Shown piece by piece: positions 2,355-46,974 of a DNA stretch of 64,000 nt. The notes under the pieces are model-generated. The model did not search any database. It had not been told where the DNA came from and was given only the letters and a program-made list of their open reading frames with translations. A program made the translations under genes and the position numbers. Location: the IMG/VR virus record IMGVR_UViG_3300042482_000702, positions 62,001-126,000 of that record. One strand, 5' to 3'. Numbering within the stretch: position 1 is the stretch's first letter; the number at the start of each line of letters is the position of its first letter.

Positions 2355-2443
2355 AATAATAAATATGTAAAATTAAAAAAAAATCTTTACATATTACCAT
2401 TATAACAGATATTTATTGATATAAACATTTAAAAAAATATATC

Positions 2444-2590
2444 ATGGGATGCGGTTGCAAAGGAAATTCGAATCAAACACAAACAACACAACAAACGAGC
2501 CAGTCTCAACCTAAAGCTCCTGAGCCAAAAACTCAGCCTATACAAGAGTCAATTCGTAAAGTTGTTGAGAAATATTATAATAAAAAATAA
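2444..2590 (+). CDS. Small protein MGCGCKGNSNQ...KYYNKK (48 aa)
   Basis: Translated by hand; TATTTAT motif upstream (2410), terminator downstream; below ORF-track cutoff. Confidence 0.7.
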   Translation: MGCGCKGNSNQTQTTQQTSQSQPKAPEPKTQPIQESIRKVVEKYYNKK

Positions 2591-2612
2591 TATTTATTGT
2601 GTTAAAAATCTG

Positions 2613-2635
2613 AGGGACTTTATGTCCCTTTTTTT
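2613..2635 (+). terminator. Intrinsic terminator
   Basis: AGGGAC-tttat-GTCCCT followed by a T run. Confidence 0.7.
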
Positions 2636-2691
2636 ATTTTCTATTTAGAATTAATATAATTTTAATTATTAATTGGTATAAGTCTAAAATT

Positions 2692-3516
2692 ATGAAATAT
2701 ATTAACGAAAAATCAAACAGAGGTATTGTGAATTTATTCTCCGATTACCTATTAAAAGAATTAACTAAAGAAAATAATATTGATGCAGTTATAGAAGTAA
2801 CCGATTGTGGTAAATTTTTTATTGTTAATGGATTAACTAATTCAAATAAGATATTAGATATGACTAAATTAAAATCTTCTTTCTTGGAAGAATATAAAGA
2901 ACTATTATCTGAATTTGGTTATACACAAATAAATATTATTGATGTAATCACTTATGGTCAAGAATTAGTTAAAAAATCTGAATATACTTATAATTTTTAT
3001 GATTCAGTTAGACCAATATATTCACAATCAATCATTGATTATGTATCGAATGATACTCAAGGATTAAAATACCACTCTATTTCTGATACTAATGGTTTAA
3101 CCCTTGAATTAGATTATTCTGAAGAGAATACTAAAGATTTAACAACTTTTAATTATTCACCTTTAAACATCACATCCGAATTCCCACACGGATATAGTTT
3201 AGATATGGGTAGATTAGAATTTTATTATTCAGAATATATTGCCAATCACTTATTTTGTCATTCAATCACCGATAAAATACAATTCAAATATTCTAACATT
3301 AAAAATAATGATGACGATTACATGATTAACATTAATACAACATCTGTCCATAATAATGAATCTATCATTTCAATGGTATTAGATGTGTTTGATTTTGATA
3401 TGTTGAAATTTAAATCTACAATAAAATCATATGATATAATTGGGGACTTAACAAAACCTTTTGATAAAAAACCTTGGTTAATAAAAGACCGTATAAAAGA
3501 TTTGGTTATATTTTAA
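2692..3516 (+). CDS. Degenerate S-adenosylmethionine synthetase (MetK)-like protein
   Basis: By-eye match to MetK N- and C-terminal segments (IVNLFSDYLL, VIEV..IVNG..LDM, EFGY, GR..YY.EYIA..L, DVFDF, KPW); catalytic motifs absent. Confidence 0.65.
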   Translation: MKYINEKSNRGIVNLFSDYLLKELTKENNIDAVIEVTDCGKFFIVNGLTNSNKILDMTKLKSSFLEEYKELLSEFGYTQINIIDVITYGQELVKKSEYTYNFYDSVRPIYSQSIIDYVSNDTQGLKYHSISDTNGLTLELDYSEENTKDLTTFNYSPLNITSEFPHGYSLDMGRLEFYYSEYIANHLFCHSITDKIQFKYSNIKNNDDDYMININTTSVHNNESIISMVLDVFDFDMLKFKSTIKSYDIIGDLTKPFDKKPWLIKDRIKDLVIF

Positions 3517-3610
3517 CTAATTAGGAAAACAGGTATCTAATTTTACAAAGACACCTTTAAGACCAACATCAGTACTGTCAGTATACCCACCATAATTATC
3601 CAATATATAA
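3517..3610 (-). pseudogene. Out-of-frame coding-like tail behind the delta-60 gene
   Basis: +1 frame after the TAA reads YILDNYGGYTDSTDVGLKGVFVKLDTCFPN*; its TAG abuts the stop of the convergent gene at 3516. Confidence 0.4.
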
Positions 3611-5041
3611 TTATTGGATACAAACCACATCTCGATAAGTTGCGATGTCAGCAGCACCATTAAAAATACCAGCAGCGTTTGCACCAGTTGTTGGTGATAA
3701 TACAGTAATATTAGTTACAGTATTAACATTATTAACAGATATTATAGGACCCATAAATAAAATATTTCCATCAGATAACGCAGAAATTTTATTTGAGGGG
3801 AACCATTCATTTGTTGGTTCGTTTCTATATGATGCAAATGTAGTCCAAGTTCCGTCATTTAAACCAGTAGTTAATACTCTAGCAATACCAGTTTTTGTAC
3901 CCACCAGAGTTCCCACCTGTGTGAATTTACCCGCAAGAATAACTTTTCCTCCTTGACCAGGTTGGTCTAACATAGAAGTAATTGGCCCATTGCACTGTGG
4001 ATACCAACTAGTGTCTAAAACACCAGCAGCACTAAGTCTAACAGGATTTAATCCTGTAGAATTAAGACTACCTACCCCAGTAAATGAAGTAGTCCCTGTG
4101 TAACCAATCATAATTCTATTATTATTGTCTAACTGCATACAGGTTATACTACCTAAACCATCATTAGTTCTCGGGAAGACTGCGACATTAGAAGATGCAA
4201 AACTAGTATCGATTACACCATTTGCAGTAAGCTTTAGGATTCCACCATATGGGTTAAGAAAATTTCCAGCAACCAATATGCTCTGTTGGTCATTAGGTTG
4301 GACTAGAACAATCTTAACTGTCCCATTTACGGAATAAAATCCACTAGAGGCAAATGAAGTATCGGTACTTCCATTAACATTTAATCTAGCAACGTATCCA
4401 GCACCAGTAGTAGTAGTGGTTGTTACGGTATTGACATACCCACCTAAAATAAGTTTACCATCTGATTGAGTATCAACTGATAGAATTGTATAAGGGAATG
4501 AAGAGGCACCAGAAAAAGTATAATCTTTACTACCATCAGGATTTAACCGAATAATTCTCTGTATTGTTACCCCATCGTATGACGTTACAGTACCTACAAC
4601 AACTATTTTACCATTAGATTGTTTAACAATTGACATTGGACCCGGAACTCCTTCAGCAGTCGGAAAAACAGACCCAAAATTAAACCCACTCCCAACATTA
4701 AAAGTTCTATCAAGACTTAAATTATTCGTTAATTTTACTATACCTACTGAAGATGACCCAGAATAATTACTGAAAGTACCAATAATAATAGGACCTTGTG
4801 AAAACACTAAACTATAATCTTGGGATGGTGATGTGCTACAAGTACCTAAAGGCACCACATACCCTCTAACTATCGAAGATGTAGTAGTATATGTGTATCC
4901 TGTCAATAATTGACCTTTAGTTATATTTGATGCTAATAGGATTGGTGTGGTACTAGTACCAGTATATCCAAATAAGTTAAATGCTGATACGGCGTATGAA
5001 GACCCCGAATATTCCGCTTGTAATGTAAATCTAATATCCAT
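3611..5041 (-). CDS. Delta-60 repeat (DUF5122-type) beta-propeller virion/adhesin protein
   Basis: Repeated Q-S-(N/D)-G-K-I/L-(V/I)..G...RLN.DG..D..F blades. Confidence 0.8.
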   Translation of the reverse strand: MDIRFTLQAEYSGSSYAVSAFNLFGYTGTSTTPILLASNITKGQLLTGYTYTTTSSIVRGYVVPLGTCSTSPSQDYSLVFSQGPIIIGTFSNYSGSSSVGIVKLTNNLSLDRTFNVGSGFNFGSVFPTAEGVPGPMSIVKQSNGKIVVVGTVTSYDGVTIQRIIRLNPDGSKDYTFSGASSFPYTILSVDTQSDGKLILGGYVNTVTTTTTTGAGYVARLNVNGSTDTSFASSGFYSVNGTVKIVLVQPNDQQSILVAGNFLNPYGGILKLTANGVIDTSFASSNVAVFPRTNDGLGSITCMQLDNNNRIMIGYTGTTSFTGVGSLNSTGLNPVRLSAAGVLDTSWYPQCNGPITSMLDQPGQGGKVILAGKFTQVGTLVGTKTGIARVLTTGLNDGTWTTFASYRNEPTNEWFPSNKISALSDGNILFMGPIISVNNVNTVTNITVLSPTTGANAAGIFNGAADIATYRDVVCIQ

Positions 5042-5070
5042 AATTATAAATATTTGTTATTTGTATAAAA

Positions 5071-5112
5071 GTTTAAGTTTAGTTGTTAATTGTTTAAGTT
5101 TAGTTGTTAATT
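5071..5112. repeat. 21-bp tandem duplication
   Basis: gtttaagtttagttgttaatt x2 (5071-5091, 5092-5112). Confidence 0.9.
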
Positions 5113-5168
5113 TGAACATCGATTCTATATTCACATGACACCGAACTCATATCCTGAATATCATATTT
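5100..5168 (-). pseudogene. In-frame orphan C-terminus KYDIQDMSSVSCEYRIDVQINN*
   Basis: Directly follows TAA 5169-5171 in the same frame; it is a copy of the internal repeat at 5808-6005. Confidence 0.8.
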
Positions 5169-8066
5169 TTATCTATAATCTTTTATTAATCTTACCGAGT
5201 AACCCCATTTCTTATTCTGCCATGACCGATTCAAATCACCACCACCATTAGTACTAAGGTTTCGGTAATAGGCTCCATTAGCATCGAACTCGAACTGTGA
5301 CGAACTCCACCAGTTACCTACTTCTCCCATAGTAGTAAACACCCCAATGTCCATTCGCTCCCCTCCTGGAAGACCTGTCCACCCACTTTCGTTAGTAGCA
5401 TTAGAATTAGGGTATTGCCAAAGTCCAGTGCCGAGTTGTTGTACTGGGTTACCTGTCGGACCCAATGGGCCCGTTCCTGTTGATTTCATTTTCCCTTTTG
5501 GACCATTTAATATAGGTGGTCCACTTAAACAGACTCCAAATGTATCCCATTCGTCATTTGTAGGAACGTGATAACCTAATGGAGCTAATCCTCTTGAATC
5601 ATTTACCGCAAACCAGTTGTATAGTTTGCCATAGATAGGTCCGTTAGATGATAAGTTTAAATAATAAGACCAAGCACCTACCCCACTGTTACCATAATTT
5701 ATCCATTCTGTATTAGTAGTTGCTTGGAATATAGTATCTCCATTTCTATAAGTAGTTACTTCGAGGTTTTTGGCTTCCCATATTAAATTGAATGGGGCAC
5801 AATTGCAACTAACGTCAATTCTATATTCACATGAATAAATAGGTGATGTCTCCTGAACATCAATTCTATATTCACACGAATAAATAGGTAATATCTCCTG
5901 AACATCAATTCTATATTCACATGCCGCCGAACTCATATCCTGAACATCAATTCTGTATTCACATGCCGCCGAACTCATATCCTGAACATCAATTCTATAG
6001 TCACAATAAGAAAAGTTTAGAGAAGCATTTAAACAACTAGGTATTTGAGATGCTCCTAAAATATTAATATTATTAATATCTCGAACATAAACCACATCAT
6101 ATGGCGGATTTTGATTAATAATATATAATTTATTTGGAGATGTGCTAGATTCAGTTATGTAAATATTTCCATTGTCTTCAAAAAGACCATAAGTTGCACA
6201 ACCAATATTTACTAGTTGAACATCAACTTCCGGAATACCACCTGTTAAATAATCCCATTGAGTTATATAACAATACCTTATAACCTCAAACTCATCCTCC
6301 ACCTCTACATAATTAAGTGCTATGAATTTATTTGTTGTTGTTTTATAAAAATCTCCAGTTATTCCAGATTGGGAAATGTTTGATATTGGCCTATTAATGA
6401 CCATTGGAAATTTAGTTGTCATAACAGGACTTCCACCTGACACATCAATCTCAACAACTTCGTCAGGATTAGTAAAAGTATTTACAGCCAAAATCACAGT
6501 ATTTGAAATTGCCGCCAAACCTGCTGATGAAGTAAAACCAACTGGAAAATCTATGAATCTAAAAAATGTTGCCGTAAATGATGGTAAGGTTATATTATAC
6601 TCAACAAATGATGTTCCGGAAATACCCCAAAGTTTACCCGTTGTTCCATTAAATGAATGAGCAATATCAACACTATTATTTGGAAAATTTGGTACTGTTA
6701 ACAGTGTTAAGGTGTTTACAGAAGCATTATAAGCATAAACATTAGAACCAGCATTAAACAATACAGCGCAAGTTGATACAACAGAATTACTAGTTTGTGT
6801 TGGTGTTTGTGTTGGGGTTTGTGTTGGTGTTTGGGTTGGTGTTGGTGTTCGAGTTGGTGTTTTAGTTGGCGATGGTGATGGACAAATCACGTCCACACAG
6901 TTATCTTTTTTACTTGAGTCTAAAATCGAAAATGACGCAACATCGTAATATGCCCCATCAAATGAAGTTATTTGTATAATATAATTGATTCCATTTTGGT
7001 TGAAGATATACCATTTTCCAACCGTTAATTCTTCACTATTACTCATATTACCACCACCATATGGGAAAGTACAATCTGAACATTGACGTAATGATATACT
7101 ATATAACCAATATGTATAAGGTTTTGTAGATGTTGGTGTTTGTGTTGGTGTTTTAGTTGGTGTTTGTGTTGGTGTTTTAGTTGGTGTTTGTGTTTGAGTT
7201 TGTGTAGGTGTTGGTGTTTTAGTCGGTGTTTGAGTTGGAGTTTGTGTTGGTGTTGGAGTTTGTGTTGGTGTTGGAGTTTGTGTTTGTGCTGGTATTCCCG
7301 AATTTGAACATATTGACAATAAAGCCCCAGCTAGACCTCCATCCCCCGAAATTGTTAATGACGTAAAATTAACCGAATTATTAATTAAAAATTTACCCCC
7401 TCCACCGGTAGCACCAGCACCTTGTCCAGATAATATTTGGTTACCTATTATTGTACTGAAACAACTTTCCGAAGACGAAATTGATGGGATTCCACTTCCC
7501 GTATTAGTAGTAAATATAAAATTCTCATTACCCCCTCCTCCTGTTGCCGTTAAGAAAACTATAATACCGTTAACTGATGCACTAAAATTCATCGTATAAG
7601 TAAAAGCTCCACTTGCACCTAAATATATTGAGTTTATAGGTGTGGTTACAGTTCCACAACTTGTATAAGCAGGTCCGTAATTTGATACACTACCTGTTCG
7701 AATATCAGTAATAACAACACCATTTATTGTTGTTGGTGGAACAACGCTGCTCACACAATTTAATATCACACTTGTTGATGTTGGAGTTGGCGTATTTGTT
7801 GGTGTTGGTGTTTTAGTTGGAGTTTGTGTTGGGGTTTGGGTAGGTGTTTTAGTTGGTGTTTGTGTATTTGTTGGTGTTAGTGTTGGTGTTTTAGTTGGTG
7901 TTTGAGTTGGTGTTTTAGTCGGTGTTTGTGTTTGAGTTTGTGTAGGTGTTTGCGTAAATTGTAATAAAACACCATTAATTCTAATGGTGTTTGGTATAGG
8001 ATTATTGTTGGCTTTTTTCATAGAAGCCAACGATACATCATCAAATTTTTTAAGTAATTGTGTCAT
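5169..8066 (-). CDS. Modular fibre/adhesin with Thr-Pro linkers and C-terminal FISUMP (Fibrobacter major paralogous, CLec-like) domain
   Basis: WEAKNLEVTTYRNGD, YGKLYNWFAV, LAPLGYHVPT.DEW, GWTGLPGG.R, WWSSS, GYSVRLIKD; TPTQTPTK linkers. Confidence 0.85.
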   Translation of the reverse strand: MTQLLKKFDDVSLASMKKANNNPIPNTIRINGVLLQFTQTPTQTQTQTPTKTPTQTPTKTPTLTPTNTQTPTKTPTQTPTQTPTKTPTPTNTPTPTSTSVILNCVSSVVPPTTINGVVITDIRTGSVSNYGPAYTSCGTVTTPINSIYLGASGAFTYTMNFSASVNGIIVFLTATGGGGNENFIFTTNTGSGIPSISSSESCFSTIIGNQILSGQGAGATGGGGKFLINNSVNFTSLTISGDGGLAGALLSICSNSGIPAQTQTPTPTQTPTPTQTPTQTPTKTPTPTQTQTQTPTKTPTQTPTKTPTQTPTSTKPYTYWLYSISLRQCSDCTFPYGGGNMSNSEELTVGKWYIFNQNGINYIIQITSFDGAYYDVASFSILDSSKKDNCVDVICPSPSPTKTPTRTPTPTQTPTQTPTQTPTQTSNSVVSTCAVLFNAGSNVYAYNASVNTLTLLTVPNFPNNSVDIAHSFNGTTGKLWGISGTSFVEYNITLPSFTATFFRFIDFPVGFTSSAGLAAISNTVILAVNTFTNPDEVVEIDVSGGSPVMTTKFPMVINRPISNISQSGITGDFYKTTTNKFIALNYVEVEDEFEVIRYCYITQWDYLTGGIPEVDVQLVNIGCATYGLFEDNGNIYITESSTSPNKLYIINQNPPYDVVYVRDINNINILGASQIPSCLNASLNFSYCDYRIDVQDMSSAACEYRIDVQDMSSAACEYRIDVQEILPIYSCEYRIDVQETSPIYSCEYRIDVSCNCAPFNLIWEAKNLEVTTYRNGDTIFQATTNTEWINYGNSGVGAWSYYLNLSSNGPIYGKLYNWFAVNDSRGLAPLGYHVPTNDEWDTFGVCLSGPPILNGPKGKMKSTGTGPLGPTGNPVQQLGTGLWQYPNSNATNESGWTGLPGGERMDIGVFTTMGEVGNWWSSSQFEFDANGAYYRNLSTNGGGDLNRSWQNKKWGYSVRLIKDYR
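5808..6005 (-). repeat. Five coding repeats C(E/D)YRIDV(Q), 42-45 bp period
   Basis: Core gaacatcaattctatattcaca near 5855, 5900, 5942, 5984, plus a variant at 5811. Confidence 0.9.
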
Positions 8067-8076
8067 TTATTTAAAT

Positions 8077-11000
8077 TTACAGTACCTCGACCCAACTATT
8101 ATCCGGACAGAAATATATTATGTCGTTTGTTGCATCAGTACAATAACCAATGATTCGAACATTATTACCCGATACAGGTGGAGATATTGAACTGAACTCT
8201 CCAGCAGTTGTTGATACATATAGTATAGAACCTAAAGTCGCTGAGGTAAATGATGTTGTACTAAATTTAGCATAACCTCTTAATAACATTCCACCAGCAA
8301 TTGTTGTCCCTAACGCCATACCTAATAATCCTAATGATGTAACAACTGTTGTTGCATCTGCCAATGTCCAAGTCCCACCAGTACTATAATAATAAACTGA
8401 CCCGGCAGTTAATGATGTACCTACACCAAAATAAACAACTTCTCCCGCACCTCCGTTATTAACAGGTACTGTAAATATTTTATTTTTTTCAATGTTAAGA
8501 TTATTAACAAATGTTGTGTTACTTCTGTTTGCAGTAATATTACTACCTATAATGTTAGAATTATTAAAGGAAGATGGAATTCTATTATATGTACCACCAA
8601 GGATTGATGATAAAGACGCACAAGCCCAATTTCCATTACCAGCACCAACGAATGAACAATAACCAACAGCACAGTTTTGGTCACCACCACCAATAAATGA
8701 ACCTTTTTTACCACAGTTAATTGAACCACCCGCAATTGTTGTACAAGAATCACTTACACTATTACGAAATCCACCACCAATGAATGACCGTACCCCATAA
8801 GCACAATTTGACCAACCACCACCTATTGTTGAATTGACCCCTGACGCTATATTATTTATATTAGGATACGTACTAGAGTAATATTCATTATACCCACCTC
8901 CAATAAAACTTCCTGCTCCTCTGGCAATATTATGTTGGCCTCCTCCAATTGTTGAAGAGTATCCGAAAGATTTATTCAAACGTCCACCACTAACTGTTGA
9001 GGTAAATCCCGTCGCAATATTACCTACACTTCCCATCATAGGGAAATAACCTGGGGAACTTGTATTTCCAGTAACTTTAAATCCACCACCACCACCAATT
9101 GTAGAATAATTTCCAGAAGCAATATTCCCACTACCCCCACCTATTGTAGAATGACAACCACAAGTAACATTACAAATACCACCACCAATAACAGACCCAC
9201 AGGCGTTAGCTGTGTTCCCAATACCACCACCAATAAATGAAGAATTTCCACCACCTAAACTTTTTGTTAAATTCCTAACTAATGGTTCATTTCCAATTCC
9301 AAATACTTGAACCGAGCCTGTTGCTCCGGTAACGTTTATATCGGTATATCCAATGTAAGACCCAGAGGTATAAGTCGAAGCTGTTACAACAACATTTCTC
9401 GAACAAGCGTTATTATCAAAAGTTAATAATAAGTCATTAGTTGTAAAACAACTAGTTAAATTCCCAATAAACCTTAATGAACAATTTCCAATAACAATAG
9501 AAGATTGTATTTTTGGTGAATTACCCACCATATTTAAAACACCTCCAGCAATACCACCTTGGTATCCACAAACAACATTCACATGTCCACCACCTACAAA
9601 GGTCATATTAGTAGCCGATTTATTATTATTACCTGAAACTATCCCTGAACCATAACCACACGCATAATTACCACAACCACCTAAAATAGCCGCTCTAGTA
9701 CGAAAAGTTTTATTAGAAAGACCACCAGCAATAACCGCATCTTCACCACATTGACTAGTCGTTCCTGTTATAATATTACATCTACCACCACCAATAGTTG
9801 ACATAGTAGTTGAAATAAGATTAACTCTACCCCCAACAATTGATGAGAATGTCCCCCCACTAAGTACACGGTTATAAAATCCACCACCAATTGTTGAATC
9901 TCCTCCAAACGCTCTATTACAACTACCACCACCAATGAATGATAATGTTCCACAAGTACAATTTAACCAACCACCACCTATGGTTGAGCTATTACCGCAA
10001 GCTCTATTTAGACGACCTCCACCAATTGTTGAACAAGTACTAACAATACAGTTTGAACATCCCCCACCAATAGATGAATAACAGGAAGAAATTTTATTAT
10101 AACAACCACCACCAATAGATGAATACCTATTACCGACACAGTTAGATTTTCCACCACTAATAGTTGAACCAATAACATTCATCACTGTATTACAACAACC
10201 ACCACCAATAGTCGATGTATCACCAAACGCTTTGTTTAAAACACCACCACCAACTGTTGAATTGCTCTGGGTAGTACAATTTGAATTACCACCACCAATA
10301 AATGACCCTTCACCATTTGCTTTATTATTATTACCACCACCAATGAATGAACAATTTCCCTTTGCATAGTTTTTAAATCCACCCGCAATTGTTATATTCT
10401 TACCACCATCAGTAATTGTTGACCTATTTATAAAATATAATTCACCAAATGTTGTCCCAACATTATTTTGAAGGTTTACCAGAGTAACATCATAATAACT
10501 TGGATATCCAGTATTTGATAGAACAATAGAGTCAACATCGGATTGAATCGTTTTTCCGTAATTTGGGTTATACGATAAAATATTATTTCCAATGGTAAAA
10601 TATGGTGATACGTCACCATAAAAATATAAAGTAGCATAATTAGTTTTATAAGGATTACCTATAAAAATTGTTTGTTGACCCACAACATTTAATACACCAC
10701 CCCCTATAGTCGATGAACAACCTTGTATTGTATTTCCTTGACCACCTAATATTGTAGAATTTTTACATTTTATTTGATTAAGATATCCTCCCAAAATATT
10801 TGATGTTGTTCCTGAAGCAATATTACCTTGACCACCAACAACAACAGATGCATACCCAAATGCTATATTAGTCTTATATCCACTATAGGTACGTCCTCCA
10901 CCACCAACGAATGATAATGTTCCTGAAGCAATATTACAATTACCACCACCAACTGTTGATAGAGAACCTGATGCTTGGTTACGATAACCACCACCAATTG

Positions 11001-14000
11001 TTGACCGATAATTAGAAGCTGTATTACACTGACCACCACCGACTGTTGAATAACGTAGTGTCGCACAGTTTTTATCGCCTCCACCGATTGTTGTATAACT
11101 ATTAGATGCGATATTACCTCGACCACCACCGATTGTTGCAAAATCTCCAGAAGCAGTATTACCATAACCATACCACCCTCCATTATTAAAACACTTACCA
11201 CCACCACCAATTGTTGAACTAACACCGGAAGCTTTGTTATGACCACCACCACCAATTGTTGAGGTACTACCGGAAGCAATGTTATAACCACCTCCACCTA
11301 TTGTTGACCGATAAGTAGAAGCAGTATTATTTTCACCACCACCAATTGTTGTCCAATAGGCTGAAGCTTTATTACAAACACCCCCACCAACAGTAGAGTT
11401 TAAACCTCCGGATTTATTACAAGTTCCACCACCAATTGTTGAACCATAACCATAACTATTATTACACTTACCACCACCTATTGTTGCTCGAGGATTTGAA
11501 GCTGAATTATTTTCACCACCTCCAATTGTTGTATAGTAACCTGTTGCGCAGTTCCTAAAACCACCACCAATGGTTGACAATACACCAGAATTAAAACAAA
11601 TCGTAGTTCCAGTTAATAGACCTGTTGAATAAGTAAATGTTCCTCCGGAAGTATTATGCCCAATACCTCCACCAATTGTCACACCTAAAGATTTATTTTC
11701 ATTAGGTAATGATTGAATTACATTTCTATGTCCTCCACCAATAAATGACATTCTTGCGTTTGTTGTATTACGATAACCACCAACAACTGTTGAATAAGTC
11801 CCACTACTAATATTACATTTCCCTCCTAAAGACGCTGAATAATTCCCTATTGAAGTATTCAAAACACCACATCTAACAGACGAACAAGTACCACCACCTA
11901 ATACAATGACTGGAGGTTCAGGACTTGTTCCGCTAGTCCCCGCAGAACCAGTTGCTCCACTAGTCCCTGACGAACCATTTACTCCACTAGTTCCTGACGA
12001 ACCATTTACTCCACTAGTTCCTGATGTTCCTCTAGTTCCTGACGAACCTGACGAACCTGTCGCTCCACTAGTTCCTGACGAACCTGTCGCTCCACTAGTT
12101 CCTGACGAACCATTTACTCCACTAGTTCCTGACGAACCTGTTGCCCCACTAGTTCCTGACGAACCATTTACTCCACTAGTTCCTGACGAACCATTTACTC
12201 CACTAGTTCCTGACGAACCTGTCGCTCCACTAGTTCCTGATGTTCCTGTTGCCCCACTAGTTCCTGATGTTCCTCTAGTTCCTGACGAACCTGACGAACC
12301 ATTTGCTCCACTAGTCCCTGACGAACCATTTACTCCACTAGTTCCTGACGAACCTGTTGCTCCACTAGTTCCTGATGTTCCTCTAGTTCCTGACGAACCT
12401 GACGAACCTGTCGCTCCACTAGTTCCTGACGAACCTGTCGCTCCACTAGTTCCTGACGAACCATTTACTCCACTAGTTCCTGACGAACCTGTTGCCCCAC
12501 TAGTTCCTGACGAACCTGTTGCCCCACTAGTTCCTGACGAACCATTTACTCCACTAGTTCCTGACGAACCTGTCGCTCCACTAGTTCCTGACGAACCATT
12601 CGCTCCCGATGTTCCTGATGTTCCTCTATTTCCTGACGAACCTGACGAACCTGTTGCACCACTAGTTCCTGACGAACCTGTTGCACCACTAGTTCCTGAC
12701 GAACCATTTGCTCCCGATGTTCCTGACGAACCATTTGCTCCCGATGTTCCTGACGCTCCACTAGTTCCCGATGAACCTGTTGCTCCCGATGTTCCTGACG
12801 CTCCACTAGTTCCCGATGAACCTGTTGCTCCCGATGTTCCTGACGAACCATTTGCTCCCGATGTTCCTGACGCTCCACTAGTTCCCGATGAACCTGTTGC
12901 TCCCGATGTTCCTGATGAACCTGTTGCTCCCGATGTTCCTGACTCTCCACTAGTTCCCGATGTTCCTGACTCTCCACTAGTTCCCGATGAACCTGTTGCA
13001 CCACTAGTTCCTGATGAACCTGTTGTTCCACTAGTTCCTGACGCTCCACTAGTTCCTGACGAACCTGTTGTTCCACTAGTTCCTGACGCTCCACTAGTTC
13101 CTGACGAACCATTTGCTCCCGATGTTCCCGATGAACCTGTTGCTCCCGATGTTCCTGACGAACCATTTGCTCCCGATGTTCCTGACGCTCCACTAGTTCC
13201 CGATGAACCTGTTGCTCCACTAGTTCCTGACGAACCTGTTGCTCCCGATGTTCCTGACGCTCCACTAGTTCCTGATGAACCTGTTGCACCACTAGTTCCT
13301 GATGTTCCGGATGAACCACTAACACCTGAAGTTCCACTAGAACCATTTGCTCCTGATGTTCCTGATGTTCCACTAGTACCTGAAGTCCCTTTGGTTCCGG
13401 AAAAACCACTAGAACCACTAGAACCAGCAGCCCCCGACGCTCCATTAATATTTGTTACCCACGAGTTAAAAGTTCCCGTTCCTGTTACACTAGTCACCGT
13501 AACAGTTAAAGCACCTGTATTTATATTGTAAGATTGGACAGTACCAATTAATGATTCAGTCGCAGAATTAGCGATAATTAAACTTTGACCTACTGTATAA
13601 GATAACCCTGAATATGTTGTAATCGATAGAGTACTACCACTCGATAAAGTTGATAAGTTTATACTATCCGTCGATTGACCTATAATAGCTAAACTAGTTC
13701 CTGAAGAACCGTCTTTACCTGATGTTCCATTAGTGCTCACAGGAGCAATTACCAACAACCCATTTGAACCAACACAAACTGAACATCCTGATGAACTATT
13801 AAAACTACAAATAGATAAGTCATTAACAAAAGTAGTACAACTTCTATTTGCCGTTACGTTACTACCAATGATGTTAGAATTAGTAAAACCGGAAGATATT
13901 ATATTACATTGACCACCAAGTATTGCCGAGTAATCTGAACAAACAGTGTTTAATTTACCACCACCAATAAATGAACAACCACTAAATACCTGATTACCCA

Positions 14001-15468
14001 TTCCACCAACAACAACTGAAGCGTCCCCCAAGACCCTGTTATATACATTATTGCCATCGGCAGTAGTATAAGTACCTCCACCAATAAAAGAACTACAACC
14101 CGTAATACAGTTTTTATTTCCTCCACCAATAGTTGAAAAATTTCCACAAACCTTGTTACGCATACCACCACTAATAGTTGAACCACATTCACTCACCAAA
14201 TTATTATAACCACCAAGTATTGACGAGAAACGTTCACAAACAGTATTTAATTTACCACCACCGATAAAAGAACAACCACTAAATACCTGATTACCCATTC
14301 CACCAACAACAACTGAAACGTTCCCATAAACACCGTTACATACAAAAGTATAACTATCTCCAATATATGCTCCAGTACCTCCACCAATAAAAGAACAATT
14401 ACCCGTAATATAGTTTTTACTTCCCCCACCAATAATTGAACAACATCCACAAACCTTGTTACACCTACCACCAAGTATTGCCGAGTAATCTGAACAAACA
14501 GTATTTAATCTACCACCACCAATAAATGAACAACCACTAAATACCTGATTACCCATTCCACCAACAACAACTGAAGCGTCCCCATAAACACTGTTACATA
14601 CAAAAATACTACTAATGTTATTATATGTACAAGTACCTCCACCAACAAACGAGAAATCACTTGCAATACAGTTTCTATTTCCTCCACCAATAGTTGAACA
14701 TCTTCCATAAACCTTGTTACCTTTACCACCACTAATTGTAGAAGCAGAACAACAAGCAATATTACAACATCCACCACCAATTGTTGAATTATTCCCATAA
14801 GTTTTATTTCCTTGACCACAACTATCACCACCGCCACCACCAATGAATGAATATTCACCGTAAGTACAGTTGTGATATCCACCACCAACAAATGAATGGT
14901 TCCCACACGCGAGGTTTTCTTCTCCACCACCAACGAATGAACAACCACCGATAGCTCTATTACAATTACCACCACCAATAGTTGAATAATCTCCACCAGC
15001 GGTATTTAATCTTCCACCACCAATAAATGATGTTGTACCTGACGCTACATTATCTTGACCACCAACGACCACTGAAAAATTACATGACGCTGTATTTCCA
15101 CTACCACCTAAAGACGCTGAATAAGTTCCGGACGCATCATTTGAAACATCACGTCTAACCGATGAATTAACACCAGCACCCAAAACAATAACTGCCGATG
15201 AACCGGAATCACCACCTATTTTTAAAACCAAATCTGAATCAGTAATACCAGTATAATACCAATATTCCGAAACACCATCCAAAACTGTTACATATCTACC
15301 CCCTTCATATGTTGTTGCTCCGGTTAGAATACCAACCGTTAACCCAATATATCTGAATGAGGAAACAACATTAATATTAGCTTGAGTAGTGCTAGTCCAT
15401 GGACCATACCTTGAATCTAATGATTTAGGTGAAAGAGTTGTTAAATTATCGTTAATTATAATTGCCAT
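8077..15468 (-). CDS. Giant tail-fibre-like protein (2463 aa): two STIGGG-repeat beta-helix modules separated by a collagen-like stalk
   Basis: N-term DSRYGPW...GLTVGI...EYWY head; dozens of S(T/F)IGGG.xN repeats; (G-X-Y)n; C-term cement-like domain ending IYFCPDNSWVEVL. Confidence 0.85.
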   Translation of the reverse strand: MAIIINDNLTTLSPKSLDSRYGPWTSTTQANINVVSSFRYIGLTVGILTGATTYEGGRYVTVLDGVSEYWYYTGITDSDLVLKIGGDSGSSAVIVLGAGVNSSVRRDVSNDASGTYSASLGGSGNTASCNFSVVVGGQDNVASGTTSFIGGGRLNTAGGDYSTIGGGNCNRAIGGCSFVGGGEENLACGNHSFVGGGYHNCTYGEYSFIGGGGGDSCGQGNKTYGNNSTIGGGCCNIACCSASTISGGKGNKVYGRCSTIGGGNRNCIASDFSFVGGGTCTYNNISSIFVCNSVYGDASVVVGGMGNQVFSGCSFIGGGRLNTVCSDYSAILGGRCNKVCGCCSIIGGGSKNYITGNCSFIGGGTGAYIGDSYTFVCNGVYGNVSVVVGGMGNQVFSGCSFIGGGKLNTVCERFSSILGGYNNLVSECGSTISGGMRNKVCGNFSTIGGGNKNCITGCSSFIGGGTYTTADGNNVYNRVLGDASVVVGGMGNQVFSGCSFIGGGKLNTVCSDYSAILGGQCNIISSGFTNSNIIGSNVTANRSCTTFVNDLSICSFNSSSGCSVCVGSNGLLVIAPVSTNGTSGKDGSSGTSLAIIGQSTDSINLSTLSSGSTLSITTYSGLSYTVGQSLIIANSATESLIGTVQSYNINTGALTVTVTSVTGTGTFNSWVTNINGASGAAGSSGSSGFSGTKGTSGTSGTSGTSGANGSSGTSGVSGSSGTSGTSGATGSSGTSGASGTSGATGSSGTSGATGSSGTSGASGTSGANGSSGTSGATGSSGTSGANGSSGTSGASGTSGTTGSSGTSGASGTSGTTGSSGTSGATGSSGTSGESGTSGTSGESGTSGATGSSGTSGATGSSGTSGASGTSGANGSSGTSGATGSSGTSGASGTSGATGSSGTSGASGTSGANGSSGTSGANGSSGTSGATGSSGTSGATGSSGSSGNRGTSGTSGANGSSGTSGATGSSGTSGVNGSSGTSGATGSSGTSGATGSSGTSGVNGSSGTSGATGSSGTSGATGSSGSSGTRGTSGTSGATGSSGTSGVNGSSGTSGANGSSGSSGTRGTSGTSGATGTSGTSGATGSSGTSGVNGSSGTSGVNGSSGTSGATGSSGTSGVNGSSGTSGATGSSGTSGATGSSGSSGTRGTSGTSGVNGSSGTSGVNGSSGTSGATGSAGTSGTSPEPPVIVLGGGTCSSVRCGVLNTSIGNYSASLGGKCNISSGTYSTVVGGYRNTTNARMSFIGGGHRNVIQSLPNENKSLGVTIGGGIGHNTSGGTFTYSTGLLTGTTICFNSGVLSTIGGGFRNCATGYYTTIGGGENNSASNPRATIGGGKCNNSYGYGSTIGGGTCNKSGGLNSTVGGGVCNKASAYWTTIGGGENNTASTYRSTIGGGGYNIASGSTSTIGGGGHNKASGVSSTIGGGGKCFNNGGWYGYGNTASGDFATIGGGRGNIASNSYTTIGGGDKNCATLRYSTVGGGQCNTASNYRSTIGGGYRNQASGSLSTVGGGNCNIASGTLSFVGGGGRTYSGYKTNIAFGYASVVVGGQGNIASGTTSNILGGYLNQIKCKNSTILGGQGNTIQGCSSTIGGGVLNVVGQQTIFIGNPYKTNYATLYFYGDVSPYFTIGNNILSYNPNYGKTIQSDVDSIVLSNTGYPSYYDVTLVNLQNNVGTTFGELYFINRSTITDGGKNITIAGGFKNYAKGNCSFIGGGNNNKANGEGSFIGGGNSNCTTQSNSTVGGGVLNKAFGDTSTIGGGCCNTVMNVIGSTISGGKSNCVGNRYSSIGGGCYNKISSCYSSIGGGCSNCIVSTCSTIGGGRLNRACGNSSTIGGGWLNCTCGTLSFIGGGSCNRAFGGDSTIGGGFYNRVLSGGTFSSIVGGRVNLISTTMSTIGGGRCNIITGTTSQCGEDAVIAGGLSNKTFRTRAAILGGCGNYACGYGSGIVSGNNNKSATNMTFVGGGHVNVVCGYQGGIAGGVLNMVGNSPKIQSSIVIGNCSLRFIGNLTSCFTTNDLLLTFDNNACSRNVVVTASTYTSGSYIGYTDINVTGATGSVQVFGIGNEPLVRNLTKSLGGGNSSFIGGGIGNTANACGSVIGGGICNVTCGCHSTIGGGSGNIASGNYSTIGGGGGFKVTGNTSSPGYFPMMGSVGNIATGFTSTVSGGRLNKSFGYSSTIGGGQHNIARGAGSFIGGGYNEYYSSTYPNINNIASGVNSTIGGGWSNCAYGVRSFIGGGFRNSVSDSCTTIAGGSINCGKKGSFIGGGDQNCAVGYCSFVGAGNGNWACASLSSILGGTYNRIPSSFNNSNIIGSNITANRSNTTFVNNLNIEKNKIFTVPVNNGGAGEVVYFGVGTSLTAGSVYYYSTGGTWTLADATTVVTSLGLLGMALGTTIAGGMLLRGYAKFSTTSFTSATLGSILYVSTTAGEFSSISPPVSGNNVRIIGYCTDATNDIIYFCPDNSWVEVL
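11925..13445 (-). repeat. Collagen-like GSS/GTS/GAT/GAN/GVN coding repeat, 9- and 27-bp units
   Basis: About 1.5 kb of ccactagttcctgacgaacc / gctcccgatgttcc units. Confidence 0.95.
13915..14590 (-). repeat. Three near-identical blocks encoding VVVGGMGNQVFSGCSFIGGG(K/R)LNTVC
   Basis: aaatacctgattacccattccaccaacaacaactgaa near 13984, 14281 and 14539. Confidence 0.9.
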
Positions 15469-44952: not shown

Positions 44953-45852
44953 CTACTTTATTTCGTAATAATATTCATCAATATCACCTCTTAAATCCGC
45001 AACATCCTTATCCTCAGTTAGTTTAATGATTTTTATTTTACCATATAGTCTACCCCCATTTAACTGGTGATATAATTTAACCGAATCTTTCCAAGCATCA
45101 GAATCAAGACAAATGGTAATATCATTAATTGCTTTCTCATATAATGTTTCAAATAATAATTCTGACATATGTTTCCCTAACATAGGAATACTATTGGGTA
45201 AGAATAACCCATCAAACACACCCTCAACAATAAAAATCGGTTTAAACCAATCAATTAAGTTTTCATTAAATATAATTTCATCCTTTGGTGTTTCAGGGTT
45301 TTTATATTTGGCACGACTATTTGGGTCCCAACTTCTGGCAATAAAATAATTTAAATACCCCTTTTCATTATATGAAGGTATAATTACTCTACCACCGAAA
45401 CTACCCTTATCACAAAAACCAATACCGTACTTTTCAATAATATCATCTCCAATACCACGAATTTTAAGATAATTGTACGCCTGATTCCTAATTGGATATC
45501 TTGGACTACTATCTTTGAATAAAGTAAATCCTTCTGGGAGTACTAACCTTTTCTTTTTTTCTTCTCTTGGTTTATATTCTTCCGGTTGGAGAACATTATA
45601 AATTTTCTTTTGTTTTTTATTACCATATAAGTCAAATAATTTACCTAAAGGACCTTTGGTATTGTCCACATCCCCGCAAGACCAGCACTTATAAACATGT
45701 TGAAAATAATTTACCTCCAAATTACCTTTGTGTTGCCCTTCATCACAATTAACACAATCAAACGATATTTGACCCTTATGTCCATAGTGTTGTTTCTCGT
45801 CTCCAAGTATTTCTCGTAATAATTCTATTAAAATTTCCGCATCGTCTGACAT
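44953..45852 (-). CDS. DNA primase (Zn-binding + TOPRIM)
   Basis: CVNC...YKCWSC, YLKIRGI, RVIIP, ARS, KYKNP, VEGVFD, LDSD; start moved to MSDDAE. Confidence 0.9.
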   Translation of the reverse strand: MSDDAEILIELLREILGDEKQHYGHKGQISFDCVNCDEGQHKGNLEVNYFQHVYKCWSCGDVDNTKGPLGKLFDLYGNKKQKKIYNVLQPEEYKPREEKKKRLVLPEGFTLFKDSSPRYPIRNQAYNYLKIRGIGDDIIEKYGIGFCDKGSFGGRVIIPSYNEKGYLNYFIARSWDPNSRAKYKNPETPKDEIIFNENLIDWFKPIFIVEGVFDGLFLPNSIPMLGKHMSELLFETLYEKAINDITICLDSDAWKDSVKLYHQLNGGRLYGKIKIIKLTEDKDVADLRGDIDEYYYEIK

Positions 45853-45857
45853 AAAGA

Positions 45858-45865
45858 CAAAGATA
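45858..45865 (-). promoter_or_regulatory. Bacteroidota -7 box TATCTTTG
   Basis: Just upstream of the primase start. Confidence 0.55.
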
Positions 45866-45914
45866 ATAATAAATTTTATAATATCCAAACTACAAAAGTT
45901 TTATAAACCCTTTA

Positions 45915-45922
45915 TATTTATA
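45915..45922 (+). promoter_or_regulatory. Candidate late-gene motif TATTTATA
   Basis: Same motif 3-25 bp upstream of many structural/head genes (5045, 17576, 23759, 24717, 29688, 47074). Confidence 0.45.
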
Positions 45923-45939
45923 AAATATATTATAAAAAG

Positions 45940-46155
45940 ATGCCAATACAAATAACGATTAACGATATCACCGGTGCTTCACCATTTAATATCTATATAT
46001 GTGATGAACCTATCACAATATGTGTGTATGAAGAAACGATAACAACATTCCCATATTTGTTTAATGTCCCATCTATAATATCAGAACAATCATCTGTCAA
46101 TTTAAAAGTTATTGATAATAATGGTTGTGAATCAATTTTAAATTTAAATCTATAA
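45940..46155 (+). CDS. Small structural adaptor-like protein, paralogue of 16613..16918
   Basis: GASPFNIYICD...CVYEETI...LKVIDNNGC. Confidence 0.7.
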   Translation: MPIQITINDITGASPFNIYICDEPITICVYEETITTFPYLFNVPSIISEQSSVNLKVIDNNGCESILNLNL

Positions 46156-46974
46156 ATGGCGTGTTTAGAATCATATTGTATAAGTAACACCGGTAATATC
46201 ACGTATGACGATAACTATATCAGTGGTGGGACACATAACTCAAATCTTTATTGGGTAGGTCAATCAAATGGGTTATTTATTTATTACTCAACAGAAAATG
46301 TTCAATGGTGTTTATCATCAGCATTAGATGGGACTTGTTTATTATCCGGAAAATCCTCTTGTTTTAGCGAATGTCCCGACTTATGTGAGAGATATTACTC
46401 ATCAGGAATTTGTTTAACACCAACTCCATCACCAACAAATAATAATTGTAGTTCGTTGGATTTTGTTGCCTTATTAGAATGTGAACCCCTGTCACCTCCA
46501 AGTTCATCTCCTACACCAACTAAAACACCTACGCCAACCGTTACACCACCTTCAAATTCGTGTTTAACAAACAATATTGACGCAACAATTGAGGGTGTTT
46601 CACCAACTCCAACCCCAACACAAACCCCAACCCCAACATCCTCATCTATAATAGGAAGGGATTGTAGTTTTGCATCACCAATAACTTATAATATCATCGA
46701 TGATAATATAACATGCCCTCAAAGTTATTTATTTAAAAGTTGCGATAATGGTGATATATATTCAACAACAAATCTTACTAGTTCAATAGGAGATATATCA
46801 TTAATAAAAAATCAAGTTTATTTAGCCATGATAGATGGATTTAGAATGTGTATATCATATTATGAAAAGAGCGACACTATTTTAGGTGGTTATGATATTG
46901 AATTAATTAGTGAACCTTTTGGATTTAATCAAGATGGTTGTTATTATTGTAGTCAAGAGTTAACAATAACATAA
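46156..46974 (+). CDS. Cys-rich virion-like protein with Thr-Pro linkers
   Basis: Many Cys residues, PTPSPT/TPTPT linkers. Confidence 0.7.
   Translation: MACLESYCISNTGNITYDDNYISGGTHNSNLYWVGQSNGLFIYYSTENVQWCLSSALDGTCLLSGKSSCFSECPDLCERYYSSGICLTPTPSPTNNNCSSLDFVALLECEPLSPPSSSPTPTKTPTPTVTPPSNSCLTNNIDATIEGVSPTPTPTQTPTPTSSSIIGRDCSFASPITYNIIDDNITCPQSYLFKSCDNGDIYSTTNLTSSIGDISLIKNQVYLAMIDGFRMCISYYEKSDTILGGYDIELISEPFGFNQDGCYYCSQELTIT

What the first reader, a model, noticed from the sequence alone, without database searches (positions are those of the whole stretch)
5100..6005. FISUMP tip domain flanked by in-frame direct repeats, with an orphan C-terminus after the stop
Seen: five C(E/D)YRIDV repeats (5808-6005) precede the FISUMP domain. 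Immediately after the TAA the same frame reads KYDIQDMSSVSCEYRIDVQINN*, a near-identical DNA copy (5114-5158). Offsets to the internal copies (786 and 828 bp) are multiples of 3. Inference: recombination between the repeats would delete the tip in frame and give a clean short fibre; alternatively the FISUMP cassette was inserted into the repeat array. Either way this is a candidate plug-in receptor-binding cassette. FISUMP/CLec ends are established DGR targets, so a DGR elsewhere in the genome could also act on it.
Basis: partly seen in the sequence, partly recalled or inferred. Interest (0 to 1): 0.65.

Follow-up and report, generated by a model that had tools for sequence, protein, structure and literature searches.

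The report
Lectin tip nested in repeat tail
In a 322-kb jumbo phage, a lectin-like (FISUMP) end domain with its own stop codon sits inside a cysteine-repeat tail of a modular surface-protein gene, stranding the tail's old end as an untranslated fossil; this is a clear scar of domain shuffling, not an active switch or a DGR target.

Summary
The minus-strand gene 5169-8066 (965 aa) carries five C(E/D)YRIDV units, then a FISUMP domain (Pfam E 6.5e-26), then TAA. The same frame then reads 22 more codons, a 51-nt copy that is 90-92% identical to the internal units.

Comparison with relatives explains it.
- An unrelated protein of a related jumbo phage (P0022) ends in an uninterrupted array of the same repeat, "...CEYKIDTQIN stop".
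- That protein is followed by a DUF5122 gene. The window's orphan, its intergenic spacer and its DUF5122 gene are collinear with that gene end.
- So the orphan is the array's original C-terminus, and the FISUMP module lies nested in the array as a 654-nt in-frame segment.
- Twenty relatives share the core domain and the junction motif GASQxPxCL. After it they carry at least seven different continuations, so tip swapping is the rule at this locus.

There is no sign of activity.
- The genome has no reverse transcriptase and no template repeat.
- The block is nearly invariant against a sister phage that is 96% identical.
- No deletion allele was found in the protein or contig searches.

Verdict: a fossil of module shuffling, a new variant of a known kind, of moderate interest.

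The parts
5169..8066 (-). Modular 965-aa protein gene. Order: conserved N-terminal 37 aa, PT-linkers with two small domains, core domain, Cys-repeat array, FISUMP domain, then TAA at 5169-5171.
   Evidence: ORF list and translation. Pfam FISUMP match. Domain map against 21 relatives.
6012..6794 (-). Core domain (aa ~425-685) shared by 20 relatives. It ends in the junction motif GASQIPSCL (nt 6030-6056), after which the relatives diverge.
   Evidence: Word search, E 1e-203 to 2e-36. Junction table. DNA homology to L008 and L009 stops at window 6028/6029.
5811..6005 (-). Array of five 14-15-aa units, C(D/E)YRIDV(Q) plus a spacer of type DMSSAA (6 aa) or E(I/T)(L/S)PIYS (7 aa). This is the translated part of the array.
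   Evidence: P0022 carries the same unit and both spacer lengths.
5157..5810 (-). Nested segment of 654 nt (218 codons): FISUMP domain (Pfam aa 761-962 = nt 5181-5786), codons Y-R, TAA stop, and 4 codons of uncertain origin. Removing it restores a seamless six-unit array. The 3' edge is only resolved to about 5160-5180.
   Evidence: Pfam. Ungapped comparison of the gene end with array units. In-silico excision gives a 770-aa frame ending ...CEYRIDVQDMSSVSCEYRIDVQINN. FISUMP 3' ends of paralog B and of L012 match up to GATTA, and their stop sits where this gene has TAT.
5100..5168 (-). Orphan: 22 in-frame codons, KYDIQDMSSVSCEYRIDVQINN, plus TAA. It is the untranslated relic of the last 1.5 array units and the array's natural stop.
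   Evidence: Conserved in L007 with one substitution. Collinear with the real 3' end of P0022 in L018 and L019.
5071..5112 (-). Tandem duplication of 21 nt, two copies, overlapping the orphan's last codons and stop, in the spacer before the next gene.
   Evidence: TRF, 100% match. The word is found nowhere else in the genome.
3611..5041 (-). DUF5122 beta-propeller gene (476 aa), the only one in the genome. It travels with the array end as one block.
   Evidence: Pfam E 1.5e-32. Single copy. 55% aa identity to the gene that follows P0022 in L018. Collinear DNA 5135->3608 against L018 2738->4247.
3524..6027 (-). Variable block of this locus (array, FISUMP, orphan, DUF5122 gene). In the close relatives L008 and L009 a DUF285 tip of about 1.46 kb takes its place.
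   Evidence: blastn: L008 matches window 6784-6028 (91%) and 3523-563 (98%), with nothing in between. L009 has the same break points. Gene maps.

Best explanation
The gene encodes a modular, probably virion-exposed adhesin of a jumbo phage whose parts resemble Bacteroidota surface proteins.

Its original C-terminal module was a short array of Cys-containing 14-15-aa units ending in '...CEY(R/K)ID(V/T)QIN(N) stop', followed by a separate DUF5122 propeller gene. That [array + DUF5122 gene] block is itself mobile. In a related phage it hangs on a different gene at a different locus.

In the lineage of this window and its sister L007, a FISUMP (C-type-lectin-like) module of about 650 nt came to lie inside the fifth or sixth array unit, in frame. 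It terminates translation two codons after the domain's usual end. The protein therefore now ends in a FISUMP tip on a five-unit array. The last 1.5 units with the old stop are left behind as non-coding DNA in front of the DUF5122 gene.

Shown here: the nesting, the homology of the orphan to a real gene end, the block mobility, and tip swapping at a fixed junction.

Inferred: that the segment arrived by illegitimate or short-homology recombination during co-infection, that the orphan has no present function, and that the FISUMP tip binds a host surface glycan.
For: 1. Anatomy and significance of the repeat copy.
2. P0022 ends in an uninterrupted four-unit array with the same two spacer lengths and the end 'CEYKIDTQIN stop'.
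3. In L018 and L019 that end is followed, after about 100 nt, by a DUF5122 gene that starts MDIRFTLQAEY, as here. Window 5135->3608 is collinear with L018 2738->4247 over 1580 nt at 67% identity.
4. Removing 5157-5810 restores a seamless array in frame.
5. The FISUMP 3' end matches those of paralog B and of L012 up to GATTA. The paralogous FISUMP domains end at LIKD followed by a stop.
6. The L018 flanks map to another locus of this genome (window 45226-46974). The homologous 272-aa gene there stops exactly where P0022 continues with PT-linker and array.
7. Twenty relatives diverge after GASQxPxCL into FISUMP, DUF285, DUF5122, PT-linker and other tails. L008 and L009 show sharp DNA break points at 6028 and 3523.
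8. A parallel scar: paralog A's FISUMP stop is followed in frame by STPTPTPTPTST and a stop, an orphan PT-linker.
9. The layout is identical in an independent assembly.
Against: - No relative with the same core domain and an uninterrupted array was found, so the ancestral state at this locus is inferred from a different gene (P0022).
- The 3' junction is ambiguous in AT-rich sequence, and three alignments are about equally good: (a) ungapped, with TAA opposite the unit's Tyr codon; (b) a 6-nt insertion after DYR; (c) a 1-nt deletion in a TAATAGAT double stop like that of L012.
- Under (c) the in-frame relation would be a one-in-three coincidence.
- With only one substitution between the two known copies, neutrality of the orphan cannot be measured.
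- Low divergence of the whole block could also mean a recent exchange between the two lineages.
Confidence: 0.75

Rival explanations
1. FISUMP first entered as an internal, read-through domain (array - FISUMP - 1.5 units - QINN stop). The stop was created later, either by a TAY-to-TAA nonsense change or by a 6-nt insertion after '...LIK-DYR'. This differs from the best explanation only in the order of events.
For: - Ungapped, Y-R-stop-K-Y-D-I-Q lines up with C-E-Y-R-I-D-V-Q, with TAA opposite TAC.
- Gapped, GATTATAGA equals the D-Y-R codons of the penultimate unit of L018.
- FISUMP is an internal domain, followed by a linker, in P0008, P0009, P0011 and P0015.
Against: - The paralog B and L012 FISUMP genes place their own stop exactly where this gene has TAT. 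L012's 'GATTAATAGATGAAA' matches this gene's 'GATTATAGATAAAAA' after one deletion.
- The similarity upstream of 5162 is weak and AT-rich, 16 of 24 ungapped positions by my own count from the alignment.
Confidence: 0.25
2. The flanking direct repeats are a working device. Homologous recombination between the orphan and the internal units removes the FISUMP tip in a fraction of genomes, giving a mixed population with two tips.
For: - There are 51 nt at 90-92% identity in direct orientation and in frame, and the recombinants are open and end like P0022.
- The PT-linker repeats of the same gene do show length changes between the window and L007, 84 indel columns, so repeat-mediated change happens in this gene.
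Against: - No short allele in the word searches (length range 530-1690 aa), IMG/VR, JGI contigs or the sister contig.
- Array copy number is identical in the window and L007.
- The longest perfect match is only 18 nt.
- The orphan is more diverged from the internal units (8-10%) than the array as a whole is from its own consensus (5% mismatched), so it is not being homogenised with them.
Confidence: 0.08
3. The FISUMP end is diversified by a diversity-generating retroelement elsewhere in the genome.
For: Fib_succ_major, DUF1566 and DUF823 ends form one class of DGR variable regions in the literature (PMC5758913).
Against: - No RVT_1 match at E <= 1 in the record, which CheckV rates 100% complete.
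- No template-like repeat of the region; the best intragenomic matches are 66-69% identical paralogs.
- Only 2 substitutions in 636 nt of FISUMP against the sister phage.
Confidence: 0.02
4. Programmed read-through of the TAA yields a minor product extended by the 22 orphan residues.
For: The orphan is in frame and open in both known copies.
Against: - None of the 22 phage tRNAs is a suppressor.
- TAA is unlikely to be recoded in a genome of about 30% GC (my own inference; composition).
- No Rfam element lies in 3000-9000.
- An open 66-nt stretch is expected for a young relic.
Confidence: 0.03

Closest known systems
Mosaic phage tail-fibre and receptor-binding genes with exchangeable C-terminal domains (P2/Mu/P1/lambda-type fibre mosaics; T-even gp37/gp38 swapping by recombination between short conserved motifs).
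   Same: A conserved N-terminal part and a fixed junction, with different distal modules in close relatives. Break points fall at short conserved or repetitive stretches. The exchange can include a downstream gene.
   Different: - Here the new tip is nested inside the old tail and ends translation early, so the old end survives as an in-frame fossil.
- The modules are Bacteroidota-type surface domains (FISUMP, DUF285, DUF5122, PA14) joined by PT-linkers.
- The host phage is a 322-kb jumbo phage.
- A role as a fibre is not shown.
FISUMP / TIGR02145 / PF09603 domain proteins of Fibrobacter and Bacteroidota
   Same: A clear HMM match and the typical end ...SVRLIKD. More than 500 multi-domain proteins match at E <= 1e-20, and those with a source name are mostly from Bacteroidota.
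   Different: The gene is phage-encoded. The nearest match outside the sister phage (within the searched length range of 530-1690 aa) is at most 48-50% identical, so no donor is identified. The domain carries an insertion of about 20 aa rich in G and P.
DGR variable proteins with C-type-lectin-fold ends
   Same: The same domain class is used as a DGR target elsewhere.
   Different: No RT, no template repeat and no hypervariation here.
Invertible or shufflon-type alternative C-termini (Mu Gin, P1 Cin, R64 shufflon). Recalled from my own knowledge.
   Same: An unused alternative C-terminal coding segment lies just downstream of the expressed gene.
   Different: The repeats are direct, not inverted. 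The orphan is only 22 codons. No Pfam or PHROG match of any kind was found for the neighbouring ORFs that were scanned. The mechanism would be deletion, which is irreversible.

Membership tests
FISUMP (Pfam PF09603 Fib_succ_major / TIGR02145) | Match to the family HMM above the curated cut-off | tested here: met
   92.2 bits against a cut-off of 33.9, E 6.5e-26, profile positions 6-187 of 187. Confirmed on the genome at 96.4 bits.
FISUMP (Pfam PF09603 Fib_succ_major / TIGR02145) | Conserved core residues and C-terminal strand (...G-x-S-V-R-L-I-x-D) | tested here: met
   The alignment with 12 other FISUMP domains has 39 invariant columns, including YGxLYNW, LAPxGYHxPT and SVR.
DGR target gene | A DGR-type reverse transcriptase in the same genome | tested here: not met
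   No RVT_1 match at E <= 1 in the 322-kb record, while the control genomes do match.
DGR target gene | A template repeat nearly identical to the variable region, with adenine-specific differences | tested here: not met
   blastn of 5100-6030 against the genome finds only paralogs at 66-69% identity and one 40-nt stretch at 90% at the conserved end.
DGR target gene | Hypervariation of the C-terminal region among close relatives | tested here: not met
   2 substitutions in 636 nt against L007, while the flanks differ by 3.8-4.4%.
Modular phage receptor-binding or fibre protein | Conserved N-terminal part with exchangeable distal modules among syntenic relatives | tested here: met
   - The N-terminal 37 aa are identical in P0002. 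By inspection the same N-terminal sequence type heads P0003-P0005, P0007, P0009, P0012, P0013 and P0015.
- The flanking genes are the same in L007, L008, L013 and L015-L017.
- There are at least seven different continuations after the junction motif.
Modular phage receptor-binding or fibre protein | Presence in the virion and a role in adsorption | not testable with these tools
   Only context is available: the gene lies directly downstream of a 2463-aa collagen-repeat protein. No PHROG structural annotation was found.
Invertible / shufflon alternative C-terminus systems | Inverted repeats flanking the alternative segment, plus a site-specific recombinase | tested here: not met
   The copies are direct repeats. 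The neighbouring ORFs that were scanned have no Pfam or PHROG match of any kind.
CxYxIDVQ Cys-repeat C-terminal array (not in Pfam; no Pfam match over the array in this protein) | Tandem 14-15-aa units C-x-Y-x-I-D-V/T-Q with alternating 6- and 7-aa spacers, ending in QIN(N) and a stop | tested here: met
   Present in the window (translated units plus orphan), in P0002 and in P0022. The exhaustive HMMER search of 1.84 billion representatives gave only unrelated-looking repeat proteins besides these.

The most novel reading that the evidence does not exclude
The Cys-repeat array is a dedicated landing pad. It would be a linker whose repeated coding units let this group of jumbo phages insert and later pop out stop-carrying tip domains by short-homology recombination, so that a phage population holds both lectin-tipped and array-tipped adhesins. 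The array's free end might in addition dock the co-travelling DUF5122 propeller protein. If so, nesting FISUMP would switch the particle between two receptor-binding modes.
Probability: 0.07. Interest if true: 0.7.

Novelty: new variant of a known kind. Interest (0 to 1): 0.42.

Why it matters
Phage host range is set largely by distal adhesin modules, and for jumbo phages from uncultured samples almost nothing is known about how those modules are exchanged. This locus preserves an unusually legible record:

- a fixed swap junction after a conserved core domain;
- a mobile [tail module + downstream gene] block found at two different loci in related phages;
- a lectin-type domain caught nested inside the previous tail, with the old stop codon still in place.

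It gives exact break points for studying module exchange. It defines an undescribed Cys-repeat C-terminal module that always travels with a DUF5122 propeller gene. It also shows that a FISUMP end on a phage protein does not imply a DGR.

Tried and rejected
- IMG/VR protein-pattern scan and exact DNA scan for the repeat: nothing.
- JGI metagenome scan with a 23-nt repeat pattern: two hits (L010, L011). Both are chance 24-nt matches in an unrelated gene.
- megablast against GenBank phages: no match.
I did not try another route to reads.
- Exhaustive HMMER search with the array: 13 hits, all tandem-repeat or low-complexity proteins of unrelated appearance. The best is P0023, with 'CEYRNDVQIIKVRN' repeated many times, and its E-value is inflated by repetition. 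I do not count these as relatives.
- Search for a donor of the FISUMP module: more than 500 hits, none above about 48% identity apart from the sister phage. No donor is identified.
- AlphaFold2 of aa 684-965 with a 13-row alignment: mean pLDDT 53.6. The array is drawn as short strands at pLDDT about 50. This is too weak to use, and no fold search was run.
- Promoter and terminator scan of 4900-5300: no more than shuffles give. The 21-nt tandem word is local, not a genome-wide motif.
- ARAGORN's tRNA-Leu at 3998-4086 lies inside the DUF5122 ORF and has no Rfam support, so it was rejected.
- A suppressor tRNA or recoding as an explanation for the in-frame tail was rejected.
- Assembly artefact was rejected, because the same layout occurs in an independent ENA assembly.
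- Complex prediction (array against the DUF5122 protein) was not run, because the report does not claim that they bind.
Full report
**Where this is.** The window is bases 62001-126000 of a 322,477-bp IMG/VR virus record that CheckV rates complete. GC content is about 30%. The genome has 21 credible tRNA genes and no suppressor, plus SbcC-like and primase genes of phage type. It is a jumbo phage.

- The gene is on the minus strand, 5169-8066, and encodes 965 aa.
- After the core domain come five units C(D/E)YRIDV (nt 5811-6005). Their spacers are of two kinds, DMSSAA (6 aa) and E(I/T)(L/S)PIYS (7 aa).
- Pfam then finds Fib_succ_major (FISUMP) at aa 761-962, E 6.5e-26.
- TAA lies at 5169-5171. 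The same frame goes on with KYDIQDMSSVSCEYRIDVQINN and a second TAA (5100-5168).
- The DNA copy is 51 nt at 92% and 90% identity to two internal units, E about 1e-14 against the whole genome.
- The offsets are 786 and 828 nt. Crossovers there give open frames of 726 and 712 aa.
- The motif occurs nowhere else in the genome.
- An independent ENA contig (L007) is 96.3% identical over 9.5 kb and fully syntenic. It has the same five units, the same stop and the same orphan, with one substitution (GTG/GCG). The layout is therefore real and at least as old as the split between the two phages.

**What the gene is.** A word search with aa 425-760 found 20 relatives of the core domain. All share a junction motif, (G/D)(A/T)SQ(I/V)(P/F)xCL, and diverge right after it:

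| Continuation after the junction | Proteins |
|---|---|
| array + FISUMP | window protein, P0002 |
| DUF285 | P0003-5, P0014 |
| FISUMP directly | P0008, 9, 11, 12, 13 |
| DUF5122 propeller | P0010 |
| PT-linkers with other domains | P0016-21 |
| three further unnamed tails | P0006, P0007, P0015 |

Three more points show how freely modules move in this family.
- FISUMP modules also occur N-terminally and internally (P0008, P0014, P0015).
- The domain at aa 102-259 of this protein sits at the C-terminus of P0007, at 88% identity.
- The contigs L007, L008, L013 and L015-17 are the same locus: giant protein, this gene, then a convergent 272- to 274-aa gene, then 48-, 452- and 256-aa genes.

Against L008 and L009, DNA homology runs to window 6028/6029 and resumes at 3523. 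The block 3524-6027 (array, FISUMP, orphan and a 476-aa DUF5122 gene) therefore replaces a 1.46-kb DUF285 tip. The upstream neighbour is a 2463-aa collagen-repeat protein. A virion-exposed adhesin is a reasonable inference, but it is not shown.

**The key result.** A word search with the array alone (aa 684-760) found, besides P0002, one protein: P0022, 609 aa.
- Its body is unrelated to this gene.
- It ends, after a long PT-linker, in four uninterrupted units with both spacer lengths and the end 'CEYKIDTQIN stop'.
- In both contigs that carry it (L018, L019), the next gene, about 100 nt on, is a DUF5122 gene. Its coding sequence opens MDIRFTLQAEY as here, and the product is 55% identical to the window's.
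- At the DNA level, window 5135->3608 is collinear with L018 2738->4247 (1580 nt, 67% identity). That stretch covers the orphan's last unit, its stop, the spacer and the whole DUF5122 gene.

The orphan is therefore the homologue of a genuine gene end. Removing 5157-5810 (654 nt, 218 codons) restores a seamless six-unit array ending in QINN. So FISUMP lies nested in the array.

**The block itself moves.** The L018 flanks match another locus of this genome (window 45226-46146, at 75% and 51% aa identity). P0022's body matches the 272-aa gene at 46156-46974, which stops exactly where P0022 continues with linker and array. Related phages thus carry [array + DUF5122 gene] on different genes.

**A second scar.** Paralog A (1649 aa, outside the window) ends ...SVRLIKD TAA. 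The frame then reads STPTPTPTPTST and a stop, an orphan PT-linker. Stop-carrying FISUMP modules sitting inside linker-type repeats seem to be a recurrent outcome in this genome.

**The junctions.**
- The 5' junction is sharp. Unit 5 reads CEYRIDV, and then S replaces the expected Q at 5810.
- The 3' junction is only resolved to about 5160-5180.
- FISUMP homology to paralog B (24 identical nt) and to L012 runs to GATTA, and in both their stop sits where this gene has TAT.
- Solid array homology starts at GAT ATT CAG (5162).
- In between, three alignments are about equally good: TAA opposite the unit's Tyr codon; a 6-nt insertion after DYR; or a 1-nt deletion in a TAATAGAT double stop as in L012.
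- It therefore stays open whether the module came with its stop or acquired it later, and whether the in-frame relation is meaningful or a one-in-three accident.

**Is it active? No sign of it.**
- DGR: no RVT_1 match at E <= 1, and no template-like copy. The literature does list Fib_succ_major-type ends among DGR targets (PMC5758913), so the idea was fair, but this genome lacks the machinery.
- Variation: against L007 the stretch 5066-6024 has 4 differences in 959 nt, against 118 in 2195 nt of the flanking core domain and DUF5122 gene (Fisher p 1.6e-14). The tip is conserved or recently shared, not diversified.
- Deletion alleles: none in two word searches of 5.8 billion proteins, two IMG/VR scans, one JGI contig scan, or the sister contig.
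- Array copy number is the same in both phages, while the PT-linkers differ by 84 indel columns.
- The longest exact word shared by the orphan and the array is 18 nt.
Rare events remain untested.
- Read-through: no suppressor tRNA and no Rfam element.

**Origin of the module.** The FISUMP domain is 99.5% identical to that of P0002, 50% to paralog A's, and at most 48% to any other in the databases. No donor is identified. Most named relatives are Bacteroidota surface proteins, which fits the PT-linkers, DUF5122, DUF285 and SprB-like neighbours and hints at a Bacteroidota host. That host assignment is an inference.

**Structure.** An AlphaFold2 model of aa 684-965 was of low confidence (mean pLDDT 53.6) and was not used.

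**Verdict.** The anatomy is real. The best reading is a fossil: a lectin-type tip nested in a Cys-repeat tail, with the old C-terminus stranded behind the new stop, at a locus where tips are swapped freely among related jumbo phages. This is a new variant of the well-known mosaicism of phage adhesin genes. It is of moderate interest, and would be more interesting only if reads showed the repeats to mediate ongoing loss of the tip.

Noticed in passing
L001:2071-2112 (genome 276424-276465, outside the window): Paralog A (1649 aa, two to three FISUMP domains) ends ...SVRLIKD TAA. The frame then reads STPTPTPTPTST and a stop, an orphan PT-linker behind the stop that parallels the orphan studied here.
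   Followed up: partly
window 45226-46974 against L018:3-2770: In the related phage of L018 and L019, the [PT-linker + array + DUF5122 gene] block hangs on the homologue of the 272-aa gene at window 46156-46974. In this genome that gene stops just where the linker would begin. The block therefore sits at different loci in related phages.
   Followed up: yes
window 7290-7763 (aa 102-259 of the gene): This internal domain is 88% identical to the C-terminal domain of P0007 (aa 652-809). Domain order is permuted between relatives, not only the tips.
   Followed up: partly
window 6231-6252, 6426-6446 and 3600-4400: Differences from the sister contig L007 cluster tightly in two short patches of the core domain and across the middle of the DUF5122 gene (up to 26 per 200 nt). 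Other stretches have none at all: 2400-3000, 5400-5800 and 6600-6800. These patches may be specificity loops or small recombination tracts.
   Followed up: no
window 8077-15468 (-): A 2463-aa protein with a long collagen triple-helix repeat region (Pfam E 5e-68) and many GGG-x-N-type repeats lies directly upstream of the studied gene, separated by 10 nt.
   Followed up: no
window 5071-5112: A perfect 21-nt tandem duplication overlaps the orphan's last codons and stop, so that 'INN stop T stop T' is written twice. The word is unique in the genome.
   Followed up: partly
window 3998-4086 (-): ARAGORN calls a tRNA-Leu(taa) inside the DUF5122 ORF. Rfam gives no tRNA match there at E <= 0.1, so it is probably a false positive.
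   Followed up: yes
genome 282830-293929 (outside the window): A cluster of 20 tRNA genes on the minus strand, with none a suppressor.
   Followed up: no
P0023 (database protein, 392 aa): A protein made of many 14-aa units 'CEYRNDVQIIKVRN' shares 7 of the first 8 unit residues with the phage array. Its other parts look like translated repeat DNA. I took the resemblance as chance, but its origin is unexplained.
   Followed up: no
L014:8431-14301: The contig of P0010 (core domain fused to DUF5122) carries two further large FISUMP proteins downstream and glycosyltransferase genes upstream. This is a different context for the core-domain family.
   Followed up: no
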